Shown: piece by piece, positions 24,243 to 30,010 of the stretch
Layout: each line of letters begins with the position of its first letter
Numbering within the stretch: position 1 is the stretch's first letter
Assembly: GCA_002269645.1 (NCBI GenBank)
Contig: NIVC01000890.1
Coordinates: 62,001 to 126,000 of the forward strand
From: Macrostomum lignano
Lineage: Eukaryota
Length of the DNA stretch: 64,000 bases
Direction: 5' to 3'
Program-made: the position numbers and the translations under genes
The notes under the pieces: generated by a model
Seen by the model: the letters and a program-made list of their open reading frames with translations, nothing else
Told to the model about the DNA's origin: nothing
The model's database searches: none

Positions 24243-27200
24243 ATGAATCAGAACATCTGCAAACAGGTACGAATTCCTAAATTTATTGATTTAAATACGT
24301 AGTGCATCGAAACATATGCGATGTAGAGGTTTAGAAAAACAAAACATGCAGAATAACGTAGATATTATTTGTGCAAATAGTTGAACTGAAAGAACGTATT
24401 GTATTGTAACGTATATAGTAACGTATTGTACAATCTATTTGAGATCTGTAATTCATTGATATTATACGCTCGTATTATTTATTAAAAATGTGCAAAAAGA
24501 TCTCGAATGCAATTATCTATTTAGATGTAGATGCATTAGCGTACATCAGTTTGCTATTTATCAAATTCCATACAGCGATCGACATCGATGAAAAATATGT
24601 ACTTTTACATTACATGTACATCGACGAATAACTACGTCATACGTCGACCGAACGTCGGTGTAATGTACATGTGTTAGCGACGTCGATTGACGCTTGTTGA
24701 TTGCTATACGTTAATCCATTTGTTAATACGAGTACCCCCTTCACAAGAATTTCGTATTACATACTTGGCATTTTAGGTTTTCTCTGGTCTCTACCACTGC
24801 CCAACTTGCTCGCGTTTCATCGAGAAAGCCAGAATATGCAAATGCTGTCATCACATGAGCTGTAAAAATTGCAAACAAAATCCAGTAAGTGACGTCAAAT
24901 TGCAGCGTTTACAAAAAGTATTACAGTTTACTCCTAACTATTTTCACTTGTTACGAACGGATAATTTACTCTTCCGTTTTGCAAACGATTCAGGAATGGA
25001 CAGAAAATGTAGAGCTGAATTGTCACTGGTGCAGGTACGGTGTTTTTGGGCATTATAATCCTTGGGTCAAATGATAACTATTGTACTGAGCAAATGGGGG
25101 CAGAGTCACGTCACGACTGCGGTTCGATTCTATAGGGGGACTTGTGCACAAAAATTGCTGGGGCTTGTGGTGCAATTCACACCCATAAGGGTCAACACGT
25201 GTACAATGCCTGGATGATTAGAAAGTCAGGGCTCTGACACTCTAACCTGTGGGAACCTGTGGGAACCTGTGGGAACCTGTGGGAACCTGTGGGAACCTGT
25301 GGGAACCAGTGGGAACCTGTGGGAACCTGTGGGAACCTGTGGAAACCTGTGGGAACCTGTGGGAACCTGTGGGAACCTGTGGGAACCTGTGGGAACCTGT
25401 GGGAACCTGTGGGAACCTGTGGGAACCTGTGGGAACCTGTGGGAACCTGTGGGAACCTGTGGGAACCTGTGGGAACCTGTGGGAACCTGTGGGAACCTGT
25501 GGGAACCTGATTTTCTAAGCACTGTCTCACTCTTTAACTACAGTTTCGAAGCACTAGACTGCTGTTGGATGCCAGGGTTCTCGGCCAAGTTCAAACATCT
25601 TTCAGGGCGGCGCAGCTTACTCTCTGCTGAGCTGTACAGCGTGAGTTCGTTGTGAATTCAACTTTTTGTTGACTTGAGTCCATTTTGTTACCTATCAAAC
25701 TCATTCCGATTCTGACTTTTCAGGAGCTGGCAGAATATTTCGAATGTAAAATCTGTTCAAACCTGTTGCGCAAGACCCACCTGTGCTCCAGTTGCTCCCA
25801 GCCGTTGTGCCGGCGATGCTTTGCCGTGAGTGAACTGCAGTCACTTTAAACATTTCAGGACTTTAAACATCGACTATATTTCAACATGAATTGAAAATGA
25901 TGTCATTTTAGTCTGGTCATGGAGTGCTAGTATAGTTATTGGTGTGCAGCTCAGCTGCTTCTAATGCTGGCTCTTCTTTCTGCTGTCTATTTTTTGTTCC
26001 TTAGGATGTACGAGCGTAGATCGTGATAGTTAGATTGGAAACAAAGACCACTAGAAGTTACCGTTGTATCGTGTCGTAGCAGCCTAAATGTTGCAAAATC
26101 GTTTCAAGGCCCGCTTGTTTGCGTTGCAGCTAAACTTTAAATGCTCATACCTCTGGATCAGGTGCACTTAAAACAGTATTTTTTCGCGTTGATGTTCGAA
26201 ATTTTTTTTATTTAAAGATACAAAAAGTTTGACCCGGCCTATATCTACAGGTGGGAACGGCAGGCAGAAATTAGTCAAATATAAATAAGTAGTTTAAAAG
26301 TATATATGTTTGCATTAAAGCAATAGTGAGTTTTAAACAACGTAAACAAGCCTTCAAAAAACAGCAATAGTTTCGAGTGTTACATTTAGTGGTCCTTGGT
26401 TGCGAATTCTCGACTTAAGGACTTGACTAAACAGTTTTTTTCAAGTGTGGCTATATGGAACGACCGAAAACCGACCGTTTGCCAGTTCGATTATTTCATA
26501 CAAATAAAAACCTTTATTTCTAAGCTCGAGGTTTTGACTTTCGTGTAGGAGATCAGTGATGCATGCATGCGATACCCGCCTTAATTGTAGAAAGCTATTA
26601 GAAGGAATCCAGTCTGCCCGTTATGTCGGTAAGTGTTCGAATTAAAAACTATGGCCATTCATTCAGCCATCAATATGCTCATAATGGAACAACTTCATCA
26701 AATTTAATTGTGAGCTTGTCGCTAATCTGCTCCCAATAATGCTGCAACTGCAGAGCTCCGCAGCAAGACATGGAAGACGCAGTTCCCTGTAGCTGGATCG
26801 ACCAAAATGTGGCAAAGCTTCGAGAGTTAAACAGCCAGGCACCGTACATTGAGACTGAAACTGAGTCTGAGAACGAATCGGATGAAGAAACTCATCAGGT
26901 AGCGATCTGCGTTTACATTTTTGTTCAGTCGATTAAAAACGCTCCAATTTTTGGTCCAAGAGCTTTGCTTTGGTCGATATTTTAAAGCATTGATCAGATC
27001 AATCTTCATTAAGTTGACATGATCAAACTCCAAGTTTATTCCATTTATCTATTCCCTTTGCGTCTGGTCTTCTAGTCTTCATTTTCTTGGCTGTCCATAA
27101 GTGTAGAATCAATGTCAAACGTCTTGATGATGCCATTCTGATCTCTTAATCCTTGAACAATTTTAAAGTATGATGTCAAAAAACAAAAAGCTCTACTGTG

Positions 27201-30010
27201 TTCTTCAAGTTAAAGTCTTGCAACCTTTCAATCAAATTTTGTTTGGTTGGTTCACTTGTCTAAGACCTAATTCCTTTCAAGTCATTAAAGGTTTGAAGGA
27301 AGCATTGATAATCTTCAGCTATCTTCAGTTTGAGGTCAGGATTCTGGTCGTGTTTCAACGAGCTCTCATTGAATTTCTTGGTATTTGCATATACTAAAAA
27401 TAAAGATCTAAATTGAAGCATTATATAGTTCCATTATGACAATTCAAAGAAATATAAACCTGTCACAAAATGTACAAAATCACTCAATAGACTGCTGGCA
27501 ATATCTTTTTTCAGATTTCAGTACCCGTATTCGATGGCATGCATGTCAGATCACCGAACCCAGGCCTAATTGATCCTCCTCCTTTTCGGGTGGTTTTCAA
27601 TTCCACCGAAAATGGCTTGGAAGTGCAAGTTGTCCCTTATGACGGAGCGGCAACAGCAGTCTCTTTCTCTGCCACAGGAGAACCTGTTCAGAGCATTCGG
27701 AATAGGTTCGAGCCGAGTGTTCCAAGTTTGAGTCAAACGTTGCCTCGGCCAAGTCCAGCCATGCAGCCGATTCAGCATAGACCCCAGGTAGGCAGTTGTA
27801 GCAGCAGTTCATTTTTTGCATCTATCTATCTATCTATCTATCTATCTATCTGTATATCTATCTATCTATCTATCTATCTATATATATATCTATCTATCTA
27901 TCTATCTATCTATCTGTATATCTATCTATCTATCTATCTATCTATCTATCTATCTATCTATCTATCTATCTATCTATCTATCTATCTATCTATCTATCTA
28001 TCTATCCATCTGTATATCTATCTATCTATCTATCTATCTATATATATATCTATCTATCTATCTATCTATCTATCTGTATATCTATCTATCTATCTATCTA
28101 TCTATCTATCTATCTATCTATCTATCTATCTATCTATCTATCTATCTATCTATCTATCTATCTATCCATCTGTATATCTATCTATCTATCTATCTATCTA
28201 TATATATATCTATCTATCTATCTATCTATCTATCTGTATATCTATCTATCTATCTATCTATCTATCTATCTATCTATCTATCTATCTATCTATCTATCTA
28301 TCCATCTGTATATCTATCTATCTATCTATCTATCTATCTATCTATCTATCTATCTATCTATCTATCCATCTGTATATCTATCTATCTATCTATCTATCCA
28401 TCAATTAGCTTTCTCGGTAGTTGCACGTACTCTTTTGCACTACTTGAGTAGTCTGATTTTCGTTCGGCATGGCTGGTTCCAGCAGGTAGTTCCTCTGGAT
28501 AAAAGCGCTTACCGCGCCCATTGGCTTTCCAGCTGCCTTAATCGTTTCCGGTGATCTTGTGTGCGTGCTTTCAGCTTGATTGGCTGCGGCAAGCAAGCTC
28601 GAAAGAGCTCGCTTCGCTCGCTCTTTCTCGCTATCTACTATCTATCTATCCATCTATCTATCTATCTATCTATCCATCTGTATATCTATCTATCTATCTA
28701 TCTATCTATCTATCTATCTATCTATCTATCTATCTATCTATCTATCTATCTATCTATCTATCTATCTATCTATCTATCTATCCATCTGTATATCTATCTA
28801 TCTATCTATCTATCTATCTATCTATCTATCTATCTATCTATCTATCTATCTATCTATCTATCTATCTATCTATCTATCTATCTATCTATCTATCTATCTA
28901 TCTATCTATCTATCTATCTATCTATCTATCTATCTATCTATCTATCTATCTATCTATCTATCTATCTATCTATCTATCTATCTATCTATCTATCTATCTA
29001 TCTATCTATCTATCTATCTATCTATCTATCTATCTATCTATCTATCTATCTATCTATCTATCTATCTATCTATCTATCTATCTATCTATCTATCTATCTA
29101 TCTATCTATCTATCCATCTGTATATCTATCTATCTATCTATCTATCTATCTATCTATCTATCTATCTATCTATCTTTCCATTATTTGTTTCTTTTATAAA
29201 GTGATCATGGAGAAAATAAAGACAAAATTTTTCACTTTTTTGTTTTAGAATACCTGGCAGCAAAGGAATATCATATTCTCCAAATTAAAAGAATGGTCGG
29301 CTGTATGCCTTCTACTCGCATGCATCGTGATCCCTGTATTTTACCCTCTCTATTCCAAACCTCGAGCAAAATTTGAAAAGAAAATCAGCGACTTCAACTG
29401 GCGCTTTCACCATCATAAAGAAGAGTTTGTGAAGCAACCTGTCGAGAAACCCGTCTCCCTAACCAACTACGAATCTTGTATTCAAACCAAGCTTTCACTT
29501 TTCAAAGCACTGTTCTCAGACGACAGCCTGCACGATCACGAAGCCACGAATCGAGTTCTCTTTAACTGCTTGAAAAAGCAGCAGACCACAAGCAGAATTG
29601 AGCGGCCCTGCTTTCTGTTACTAGCGCACACGGACAACGCCAAACAAAGAGCCTCCGCTGACGGTTTAGCCGAGGAAATCTCAAAGCTGCTGGCAAAATG
29701 CCACAGCGCTCTCCCATTAACTAGAAGCGTCAGGAATCACTGCTCCGATCATAGCGATTTCGAAGCCAGTAGCGAGTCAAGCTGCGTGCTCTTCCGCAAT
29801 CTTCAAGGCCTTTCAATGAAAGAGTTCAAGATGCACTCCAGGCTGCATCGGGCCAGGCTCATTCTGATCACGATGGCCCTTCCGGGGGGCTACGCACTGA
29901 CGGAAGGTGCCGCACTCTACCGACTGCGAGCCCTGCAGAACTCCGAACTCGACAAGGTCGACGCTGAACGTTTGGGTCGTCTGGTGCAGGGCAACGTGCT
30001 GTCGGTGTGA
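24243..30010 (+). CDS. Tandem-RING (two all-Cys, TRIM37-like RINGs) + TM helix + LAP1/LULL1-like lumenal domain protein, 9 exons, ~529 aa
   Basis: Exons 24243-24266, 24777-24884, 24994-25034, 25544-25640, 25724-25825, 26591-26628, 26754-26898, 27515-27787, 29249-30010. All GT-AG and phase-compatible; total 1590 nt. RING1: CPTC..CKCC..CKNC..CHWC. RING2: CKIC..CSSC..CRRC..CPLCRAP. TM: WSAVCLLLACIVIPVFYPLY. The start codon and the join to the last exon are the least certain parts. Confidence 0.7.
25246..25508. repeat. 10-bp minisatellite (GGGAACCTGT)n, RING-gene intron 3
   Basis: About 26 units. Confidence 0.97.
26990..27390 (-). mobile_element. Highly degraded CR1/L2-like LINE 3' fragment, antisense in intron 7 of the RING gene
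   Basis: Minus-strand remnants FDIIL*KIVQG and FKPLM resemble the CR1/L2 ORF2 C-terminus; many stops. Confidence 0.35.
27820..29175. repeat. Two (TCTA)n microsatellite blocks (27820-28400, 28630-29175), RING-gene intron 8
   Basis: Directly visible; separated by a ~230-bp unique island. Confidence 0.97.

What the first reader, a model, noticed from the sequence alone, without database searches (positions are those of the whole stretch)
24243..30010. Double-RING protein fused via a TM helix to a LAP1/LULL1 (Torsin-activator)-like lumenal domain
Seen: hand-splicing gives one ORF with two all-Cys RINGs, an acidic/Pro-Ser linker, a single TM with no signal peptide (type II topology) and a ~220-aa C-terminal domain. 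Recalled resemblance to TOR1AIP1/2 LAP1C: RPCFLLLA ~ PATIIFTA; SCVLFRNLQGL ~ AAVVHHFESF; ARLILITMAL ~ VALVLTVLL; and the extreme C-terminus DKVDAERLGRLVQGNVLSV ~ [21 protein letters not shown], which keeps an Arg near the arginine-finger position. Established: LAP1/LULL1 complement Torsin AAA+ ATPases in trans and have no RING. Inference: a membrane-spanning E3 ligase candidate that could couple lumenal Torsin to cytosolic or nucleoplasmic ubiquitination (nuclear-envelope/ER quality control). I know of no such architecture.
Basis: partly seen in the sequence, partly recalled or inferred. Interest (0 to 1): 0.8.

Follow-up and report, generated by a model that had tools for sequence, protein, structure and literature searches.

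The report
Membrane-anchored tandem-RING ligase, orphan lumenal domain
This is a real, already annotated gene of the flatworm Macrostomum lignano that encodes a membrane-anchored protein with two TRIM37-type RING fingers, but no test supported the exciting claim that its far end resembles the Torsin activators LAP1/LULL1.

Summary
Nine GT-AG exons (24243-30010, + strand) splice into a 529-aa ORF that is letter-for-letter GenBank PAA75320.1 (BOX15_Mlig033196g1, Macrostomum lignano, 'hypothetical protein'). That annotation was built from RNA-seq transcripts, so the 27787/29249 junction has transcript support. The protein has two RING modules with identical Cys spacing. They are an internal duplication (E=6e-5, matching intron phases). 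RING2 is closest to the TRIM37 RING (PDB 3LRQ, E=1e-7). An acidic, Pro/Ser-rich linker, one hydrophobic helix (292-311) and a 218-aa C-terminal domain follow.

The LAP1/LULL1 reading is not supported:
- Pfam LAP1C gave no hit.
- BLASTP against 4TVS gave E=2.2.
- A LAP1/LULL1 HMM scored 3.1 bits (shuffle p about 0.012).
- hhalign gave probability below 1%, in a different register.
- The family's conserved disulfide cysteines and C496 are absent.

Only a core alignment whose boundaries I chose after the fact beat its controls. AlphaFold failed twice (pLDDT 41 and 34) because no homologues exist outside M. lignano, so the fold remains untested.

Best reading: a lineage-specific, type-II membrane-anchored RING E3 ligase with an orphan lumenal domain. 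Interest is modest.

The parts
24243..24266 (+). Exon 1, start codon, MNQNICKQ
   Evidence: identical to the N-terminus of PAA75320.1
24777..24884 (+). Exon 2: RING1 ligands C1-C6 (C16, C19, C29, C32, C37, C40)
   Evidence: phase 0/0, the same as exon 5
24994..25034 (+). Exon 3: RING1 ligands C7-C8 (C54-H-W-C57)
   Evidence: phase 0/2, the same as exon 6
25544..25640 (+). Exon 4: post-RING1 tail with the 'CCW' motif
   Evidence: One search aligns it with the post-RING2 tail
25724..25825 (+). Exon 5: RING2 ligands C1-C6 (C98, C101, C111, C114, C119, C122), including I100
   Evidence: Pfam RING hits below threshold; TRIM37 RING 3LRQ E=1e-7
26591..26628 (+). Exon 6: RING2 ligands C7-C8 (C133-P-L-C136) and the first two bases of the linchpin R137 codon
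26754..26898 (+). Exon 7: post-RING2 tail (AVPCSW..., TRIM37-like) and an acidic stretch, ETETESENESDEETHQ
   Evidence: alignment; 12 of the 17 paralogue nucleotide differences fall here
27515..27787 (+). Exon 8: Pro/Ser-rich linker, probably disordered
   Evidence: 100% identical in the paralogue
29249..30010 (+). Exon 9: juxtamembrane segment, TM helix, 218-aa C-terminal domain and stop codon
   Evidence: relatives found only in M. lignano
29294..29353 (+). Transmembrane helix WSAVCLLLACIVIPVFYPLY (residues 292-311)
   Evidence: The only 19-residue window with KD above 1.6; AF2 helix with pLDDT 79-88
29603..29647 (+). RPCFLLLAHTDNAKQ: a hydrophobic strand followed by a Walker-A-like remnant (AxxxxAKQ). 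This is the only segment the LAP1/LULL1 HMM aligns
   Evidence: 3.1 bits; similarity to a P-loop fragment repeat. Pattern-level only
29951..30007 (+). C-terminal DKVDAERLGRLVQGNVLSV, the proposed arginine-finger region
   Evidence: Present in the sequence; its alignment to LAP1 R563 is ambiguous
27820..29175 (.). (ATCT)n microsatellite filling most of intron 8
25244..25509 (.). 10-bp minisatellite (AACCTGTGGG) x 26.6 in intron 3

Best explanation
This is Macrostomum lignano gene BOX15_Mlig033196g1, a lineage-specific, single-pass, membrane-anchored RING-type E3 ubiquitin ligase.

Shown:
- One transcript-supported 529-aa ORF.
- Two RING modules that arose by tandem duplication of a three-exon unit and belong to the TRIM37-type all-Cys class.
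- One TM helix.
- A 218-aa C-terminal domain with no detectable relatives outside this species.

Inferred:
- The RINGs face the cytosol or nucleoplasm and the C-terminal domain faces the lumen (type II). There is no signal peptide, and a 291-aa zinc-folded N-terminus is unlikely to be translocated.
- RING2 is the catalytic, E2-binding finger. It keeps the canonical hydrophobic residue after C1 (I100), the proline after C7 (P134) and the linchpin arginine after C8 (R137).
- RING1 lacks all three (T18, H55, S58). It probably acts as a non-catalytic partner packed against RING2, an intramolecular version of active/inactive RING pairs such as BRCA1/BARD1 or RING1B/BMI1.
- The lumenal domain most likely serves as a binding or sensing module that sets where and on what the ligase acts. 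Its fold is unknown.
For: - The spliced ORF has all GT-AG junctions.
- It exactly matches PAA75320.1, and a paralogue has the same structure.
- The annotation is derived from transcripts (PMC5730564).
- Exon 9 has no start codon of its own and an in-frame TAG at its acceptor.
- RING2 matches the TRIM37 RING at E=1e-7, and the alignment extends into the post-RING 'C-x-W' segment. Pfam RING models hit residues 97-137 at E=9e-4 to 8e-3.
- RING1 against RING2 gives BLASTP E=6e-5 over 79 residues. Exon phases match: 0/0, 0/2, 2/0 for exons 2-4 and for exons 5-7.
- There is a single hydrophobic peak, at 292-311.
- The E2-contact residues were read directly from the sequence.
Against: - Pfam RING scores are below the gathering thresholds (19.9 against 27.3 bits), and RING1 alone finds no RING in the PDB.
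- Charges flanking the TM do not favour type II: +3/-1 on the N side and +5/-2 on the C side.
- The lumenal domain has no N-glycosylation sequon.
- There is no sign of purifying selection. The two paralogues differ at 9 nonsynonymous and 5 synonymous codons, and their introns are 94-99% identical, so the comparison has no power.
- No orthologue outside M. lignano was found for either half.
- No biochemical evidence of ligase activity exists.
Confidence: 0.7

Rival explanations
1. The C-terminal domain is a LAP1/LULL1-type nucleotide-free AAA+-like Torsin activator. The protein would then couple lumenal Torsin to cytosolic or nucleoplasmic ubiquitination.
For: - The architecture is the same as LAP1/LULL1: a single TM followed by a C-terminal lumenal domain of about 220 aa with no small domain (PMC4358337).
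- The LAP1/LULL1 HMM's only local alignment is the proposed beta1-alpha1 segment, FLEKHLN..PAILLLTAAR against NCLKKQ..RPCFLLLAHTD.
- A core-only global profile alignment is colinear for all four proposed motifs. It beats 49/49 rotations, 51/52 reversed rotations and 100/100 shuffles.
- Arginines (RLGRL) lie near the C-terminus.
Against: - Pfam LAP1C gave no hit.
- phmmer across 1.84e9 proteins returned no LAP1.
- BLASTP gave E=2.2.
- The HMM scored 3.1 bits with shuffle p about 0.012, for a family picked after the fact.
- hhalign gave 0.09-0.56% and chose a different register.
- The full-domain global alignment is no better than the nulls.
- The boundaries of the core test were chosen from the hypothesised alignment.
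- The conserved disulfide (LAP1 C424-C582) and C496 have no counterparts, and the protein ends before the position of the C-terminal Cys.
- R563 aligns to a gap.
- The LAP1 profile was built from amniote sequences only, so its power is limited.
Confidence: 0.1
2. The C-terminal domain is a decayed P-loop (ASCE/AAA+-type) NTPase domain of some other origin, for example derived from Torsin. It would be a pseudo-ATPase, not a LAP1 family member.
For: Pattern reading of the sequence:
- hhhh-AHTDNAKQ (Walker A GxxxxGK[ST] with G>A, G>A, T>Q).
- SCVLFRN about 55 residues later (hhhhDE > hhhhRN).
- ARLILITMAL about 25 residues after that (a sensor-1-like strand).
- VDAERLGRL resembles the classical AAA 'LDpALlRPGRF'.
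In addition, a 54-residue match (33% identity, pairwise E=8e-5) links the query to a repeated fragment carrying a true P-loop, GHLDTGKT.
Against: - No Pfam AAA, Torsin or other P-loop hit at E<=10.
- BLASTP against TorsinA found nothing.
- The P0005 hit owes its database E-value to ten copies of one unit; a single unit scores about 30 bits, which is chance level in a database search.
- Motif 'ghosts' are easy to see in any alpha/beta-like sequence.
- No structure is available.
Confidence: 0.12
3. The gene is a young, fast-evolving chimaera. Its C-terminal exon would be a recently acquired, possibly poorly structured sequence with no specific function, and the gene may be drifting.
For: - Relatives exist only in M. 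lignano.
- Paralogue differences are 9 nonsynonymous to 5 synonymous.
- Exon 9 is mobile or duplicated: there are two copies around a retroelement-like insert in the paralogous locus, and it appears in chimeric older gene models (P0002, P0004).
- AlphaFold confidence is very low.
Against: - A 253-codon open exon in the correct phase is retained in at least three genomic copies at about 99% protein identity.
- The sequence has ordinary globular composition, with alternating hydrophobic and amphipathic segments.
- Low single-sequence pLDDT is expected for any orphan domain.
- Too few substitutions exist to judge selection.
Confidence: 0.08

Closest known systems
TRIM37 RING domain (PDB 3LRQ)
   Same: Identical Cys spacing for the first six ligands (C-x2-C-x9-C-x2-C-x4-C-x2-C). 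A 'CP.CRAP.Q...V.C.W' continuation follows the RING. phmmer E=1e-7, against 4e-4 for the next RING.
   Different: No B-box, coiled coil or MATH/TRAF domain. The RING module is duplicated in tandem. A TM helix and a lumenal domain follow. TRIM37 is a soluble or peripheral protein (established knowledge).
LAP1 / LULL1 (TOR1AIP1/2; PDB 4TVS, 5J1S)
   Same: Overall layout: an N-terminal extralumenal part, one TM, then a C-terminal lumenal domain of about 220 aa that ends the protein. Both show an alternating hydrophobic-strand/helix pattern and an arginine close to the C-terminus.
   Different: No significant sequence or profile similarity. The conserved disulfide pair and C496 are absent. The protein stops before LAP1's C-terminal extension. 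LAP1/LULL1 carry no RING.
Membrane-anchored RING E3 ligases (TRIM13/TRIM59, the RNF183 group, PA-TM-RING ligases such as RNF13/GRAIL/RNF43)
   Same: A cytosolic RING tethered to a membrane by one TM helix. In the PA-TM-RING ligases a lumenal or extracellular domain is coupled to a cytosolic RING (established knowledge).
   Different: TRIM13/59 and RNF183-type proteins have almost no lumenal part. PA-TM-RING proteins are type I, with a signal peptide and an N-terminal lumenal PA domain. Here the orientation is reversed, the RING is doubled, and the lumenal domain is an orphan.
Active/inactive RING pairs (BRCA1-BARD1, RING1B-BMI1, MDM2-MDMX)
   Same: One RING has a complete set of E2-contact and linchpin residues, and the other lacks them (read from the sequence).
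   Different: Here the two RINGs are in one chain, about 40 residues apart. Whether they pack against each other is not shown.

Membership tests
RING-type zinc finger (E3 ligase domain) | Eight zinc ligands in cross-brace spacing C-x2-C-x(9-39)-C-x(1-3)-[CH]-x(2-4)-C-x2-C-x(4-48)-C-x2-C | tested here: met
   RING1 ligands are C16, C19, C29, C32, C37, C40, C54, C57. RING2 ligands are C98, C101, C111, C114, C119, C122, C133, C136.
RING-type zinc finger (E3 ligase domain) | Profile match to curated RING models | tested here: inconclusive
   RING2 hits zf-RING_2, zf-C3HC4_2 and zf-C3HC4_3 at E=9e-4 to 8e-3, at 16-20 bits against a cutoff of 27. It matches PDB TRIM37 at E=1e-7. RING1 has no Pfam or PDB RING hit on its own, but it is homologous to the RING2 module at E=6e-5.
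RING-type zinc finger (E3 ligase domain) | E2-binding and activation residues: a hydrophobic residue after C1, Pro after C7, linchpin Arg/Lys after C8 | tested here: met
   By inspection, RING2 has I100, P134 and R137, while RING1 has T18, H55 and S58. The feature is met for RING2 only. Activity was not tested.
LAP1/LULL1 lumenal domain (Pfam PF05609 LAP1C) | Match to the family profile | tested here: not met
   No PF05609 hit at E<=10. My own HMM of 122 LAP1/LULL1 sequences scored 3.1 bits, reached by 23/2000 shuffles. hhalign gave probabilities of 0.09-0.56%. BLASTP gave E=2.2.
LAP1/LULL1 lumenal domain (Pfam PF05609 LAP1C) | Conserved intramolecular disulfide between helix alpha1 and the C-terminus (LAP1 C424-C582; LULL1 C310-C468) | tested here: not met
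   The feature is defined in PMC4358337 and PMC4999309. In the best colinear alignment neither position is Cys, and the query ends before the C-terminal Cys.
LAP1/LULL1 lumenal domain (Pfam PF05609 LAP1C) | Most conserved cysteine, C496 | tested here: not met
   'YKYCDHEN' aligns to 'FKM--H--', which has no Cys.
LAP1/LULL1 lumenal domain (Pfam PF05609 LAP1C) | Strictly conserved arginine finger (LAP1 R563 / LULL1 R449) | tested here: inconclusive
   R517 and R520 (RLGRL) lie within three residues of the aligned position, but R563 itself falls in a gap. The alignment is not statistically secure.
LAP1/LULL1 lumenal domain (Pfam PF05609 LAP1C) | Nucleotide-free AAA+-like fold without the small C-terminal domain | not testable with these tools
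   AlphaFold2 single-sequence models had pLDDT 40.9 and 34.3. No homologues are available for an alignment, so a Foldseek comparison would be meaningless.
LAP1/LULL1 lumenal domain (Pfam PF05609 LAP1C) | Single TM directly N-terminal to a C-terminal lumenal domain of about 220-230 aa | tested here: met
   The TM spans 292-311, followed by 218 residues to the stop codon. The topology itself is inferred.
LAP1/LULL1 lumenal domain (Pfam PF05609 LAP1C) | Binds Torsin and stimulates its ATPase | not testable with these tools
   This needs biochemistry or a complex prediction with the M. lignano Torsin.
TRIM family (TRIM37) | Tripartite motif: RING, B-box, coiled coil | tested here: not met
   Only the RING and its immediate tail match. 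No B-box or MATH Pfam hit was found.

The most novel reading that the evidence does not exclude
The orphan lumenal domain is a highly diverged, nucleotide-free AAA+-like module that supplies an arginine to a lumenal Torsin. It could be LAP1-type or derived from Torsin. The protein would then physically link the Torsin ATPase cycle in the ER or perinuclear lumen to ubiquitin ligation on the other side of the membrane, an architecture not described in any organism.
Probability: 0.1. Interest if true: 0.8.

Novelty: new variant of a known kind. Interest (0 to 1): 0.3.

Why it matters
As it stands, this is a species-restricted membrane E3 ligase with an unusual build: tandem TRIM37-type RINGs, type II orientation and an orphan lumenal domain. 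It is of interest mainly to people studying RING evolution or Macrostomum biology. It would matter much more if the lumenal domain proved to be a Torsin-activator-like pseudo-ATPase. Ubiquitin accumulates in the nuclear-envelope blebs seen when Torsin or its cofactors are lost (PMC5156537 abstract), and no direct molecular link between lumenal Torsin and the ubiquitin system is known. The present evidence does not justify that reading. Transgenesis works in M. lignano (PMC5730564), so localisation experiments are feasible.

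Tried and rejected
- Homologue searches with the C-terminal exon, with the N-terminal 318 aa, and an exhaustive phmmer search of 1.84e9 representatives returned only M. lignano copies. They also returned P0005, a translated tandem repeat of a 61-aa P-loop fragment. Its E=1e-8 comes from ten copies of one weak match, so I rejected it as evidence.
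- AlphaFold2 was run on exon 9 (253 aa, pLDDT 40.9, only the TM helix confident) and on the 184-aa lumenal core (pLDDT 34.3). Both models are unusable, so I did not run fold search.
- I considered giving AlphaFold an alignment of the query with LAP1 family members. I rejected this as circular.
- dN/dS between the window gene and its paralogue L001 has no power: there are 17 nucleotide differences, and the introns are equally similar.
- The first look-up, of the older model P0001, found no contig.
- The Pfam ZrgA (E about 0.01-0.05) and YbjQ_2 hits to the C-terminal domain are far below threshold and fall on a His/Asp/Ser-rich loop. I dismissed them.
- A literature search for the locus tags found nothing.
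- The semi-global profile alignment with free end gaps gave a trivial score.

Full report
**Organism and gene model**

The interval 24243-30010 lies in eukaryotic, intron-rich DNA. The nine exons are 24243-24266, 24777-24884, 24994-25034, 25544-25640, 25724-25825, 26591-26628, 26754-26898, 27515-27787 and 29249-30010. Every internal boundary is AG...GT, and the exons join into a 1590-nt ORF of 529 aa.

An exact-sequence look-up shows that this protein is already public. It is PAA75320.1 / UniRef A0A267FNE4, 'hypothetical protein BOX15_Mlig033196g1' or 'RING-type domain-containing protein', from Macrostomum lignano.

A second copy, PAA53629.1 (BOX15_Mlig000831g1), sits on another contig of assembly GCA_002269645.1 and has the same nine exons (locus L001). 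The GenBank annotation of that assembly was produced from a genome-guided RNA-seq transcriptome (StringTie/TACO plus a mapped de novo assembly, with ORFs called by TransDecoder; PMC5730564).

The sequence gives independent support. The reading frame upstream of exon 9 ends in a TAG that overlaps the acceptor. Exon 9 has no in-frame ATG for about 190 codons. It can only be translated as a continuation of exon 8, which ends in phase 0.

**The cytosolic half**

Both zinc-finger modules have the same ligand spacing, C-x2-C-x9-C-x2-C-x4-C-x2-C-x(13 or 10)-C-x2-C.
- RING2 (residues 98-136) hits three Pfam RING models, but below their gathering scores (E=9e-4 to 8e-3).
- In the PDB, RING2 matches the TRIM37 RING (3LRQ) at E=1e-7. 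That alignment runs on into the post-RING segment ('CPLCRAPQQDMEDAVPCSW' against 'CPHCRAPLQ-LRELVNCRW'). The next best RING scores 4e-4.
- RING1 alone finds no RING in the PDB or Pfam. It does align to the RING2 module over 79 residues at E=6e-5, including its own 'CCW' tail.
- Exons 2-3-4 and exons 5-6-7 have the same phases (0/0, 0/2, 2/0) and similar sizes (108/41/97 nt against 102/38/145 nt).

The double RING is therefore a tandem duplication of a three-exon TRIM37-type unit.

Reading the residues that RING E3s use to engage and activate E2~Ub (established knowledge), RING2 has I100, P134 and the linchpin R137. RING1 has T18, H55 and S58 at the same positions. I infer that RING2 is the active finger and RING1 a structural or regulatory partner.

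An acidic run (ETETESENESDEETHQ) and a 91-residue Pro/Ser-rich exon follow.

**Membrane anchor**

The only 19-residue window with Kyte-Doolittle hydropathy above 1.6 covers residues 292-311 (peak 2.2). The N-terminus is not hydrophobic. AlphaFold2 predicts this segment as a helix with pLDDT 79-88.

Flanking charges are +3/-1 on the N side and +5/-2 on the C side, so the positive-inside rule does not decide the orientation. Type II topology (RINGs in the cytosol or nucleoplasm, C-terminus in the lumen) is inferred from the absence of a signal peptide and from the long zinc-folded N-terminal domain.

The 218-residue C-terminal part has six cysteines and no N-glycosylation sequon.

**The C-terminal domain and the LAP1 hypothesis**

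I confirmed the human LAP1 and LULL1 lumenal sequences against PDB 4TVS_A and 5J1S_B, and the TorsinA sequence against 6OIF_A.
- BLASTP of the flatworm domain against LAP1 gives nothing (best E=2.2 over 9 residues). The same holds against TorsinA.
- Pfam returns no LAP1C, Torsin or AAA hit at E<=10, for either the whole protein or the core.
- An exhaustive phmmer scan of 1.84 billion representative proteins finds only M. lignano copies and one repeat artefact.
- I built an HMM from 122 LAP1/LULL1 lumenal domains (amniotes only, Neff about 2.4). With all filters off it gives 3.1 bits.
- hhalign gives probabilities of 0.09% (global) and 0.56% (local). The local alignment pairs the flatworm juxtamembrane region with LAP1's C-terminal helices, which is a different, non-colinear register.
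- A global profile alignment of the whole lumenal domain is no better than circular rotations, reversed sequences or shuffles.
Those boundaries were chosen from the hypothesis, so I treat this as a lead, not a test.
- Of the residues that define the family (PMC4358337 and PMC4999309), the disulfide pair C424-C582 and the most conserved C496 have no counterpart. The arginine finger R563 falls in a gap next to 'RLGRL'.

**Pattern-level remark**

The domain can be read as a decayed ASCE/AAA+ core:
- hhhh-AHTDNAKQ (a Walker A ghost);
- SCVLFRN (a Walker B ghost; LAP1 has hhhhHR);
- ARLILITMAL (a sensor-1-like strand);
- VDAERLGRL (reminiscent of the AAA 'RPGRF' arginine-finger motif).

The spacings are typical of that fold. 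I record this as an idea, because no profile or structural result supports it.

**Structure**

Two AlphaFold2 runs, necessarily without an alignment, gave pLDDT 40.9 and 34.3. Structure comparison was therefore not attempted. The fold, and with it the 'works like LAP1' question, remains open.

**Evolution**

The two genomic copies differ at 17 of 1590 coding positions (9 nonsynonymous and 5 synonymous codons). Twelve of the 17 differences lie in exon 7. The introns are 94-99% identical. These are recent duplicates, consistent with the assembly's known redundancy (PMC5730564), and they say nothing about selection.

In the paralogous locus exon 9 is present twice, on either side of a retroelement-like insert of about 5.4 kb. 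Older gene models (P0001, P0002, P0004) are truncated or chimeric versions.

**Verdict**

Its best-supported identity is a lineage-specific, type-II membrane-anchored tandem-RING E3 ligase. The LAP1/Torsin-activator interpretation is not supported by any sequence or profile test, and two of its three signature residue features are absent. It survives only as a low-probability possibility (about 0.1) that needs a real alignment or a structure to settle.

Noticed in passing
window 25244-25509 (intron 3); L001 about 11002-11557: A 10-bp minisatellite, (AACCTGTGGG) x 26.6 at 98% match. The paralogous locus carries a longer array (about 555 bp), so copy number differs between the duplicates.
   Followed up: partly
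window 27820-29175 (intron 8): About 336 copies of ATCT fill most of the 1.46-kb intron. They are interrupted by a unique, GC-richer island of about 230 bp (about 28400-28640). Retention of the intron would give a long 'IYLS' low-complexity ORF (27491-28405).
   Followed up: partly
L001 14797-15555 and 21007-21765: In the paralogous locus the last exon (TM plus lumenal domain) is present twice at 98.8% protein identity. The copies flank an insert of about 5.4 kb with ORFs of 451 and 750 aa. The older model P0002, named 'Reverse transcriptase domain-containing protein', spans both copies. This could be a retroelement-associated duplication or an assembly artefact.
   Followed up: partly
window 36329-36937 (-) and 40278-40850 (-); L001 24870-25558 (-): Two AIG1/GIMAP-type GTPase ORFs (Pfam AIG1, E=6e-16 and 1e-24) lie downstream of the gene. 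An AIG1 gene also lies downstream of the paralogue, so the neighbourhood was duplicated together with the gene.
   Followed up: partly
window 26754-26898 (exon 7): Twelve of the 17 coding differences between the two paralogues fall in this 145-nt exon (the post-RING2 tail and acidic stretch). Exons 1-6 and exon 8 are 100% identical.
   Followed up: yes
window 2400-8950 and 11750-12870: Long coding-like low-complexity repeat arrays are open in several frames on both strands (units such as '[12 protein letters not shown]', '[28 protein letters not shown]', 'NPWFIKCS'). They show strong GC and AT skew (GC skew up to 0.49, AT skew up to 0.60).
   Followed up: no
window 58134-60576 (-): An MFS-transporter-like ORF (Pfam MFS_1, E=6e-6, below threshold) lies next to an ORF interrupted by a very long (LAPLV/LKPLV)n repeat. 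This is probably an intronic or exonic 15-bp minisatellite.
   Followed up: no
protein P0005 (ENA contig, 646 aa): A predicted protein made of ten tandem copies of a 61-aa unit containing a bona fide P-loop (CLLLVGHLDTGKT). It looks like a translated satellite of a P-loop gene fragment. It gives inflated E-values in Pfam (TniB, AAA, GTP_EFTU) and against the query.
   Followed up: partly
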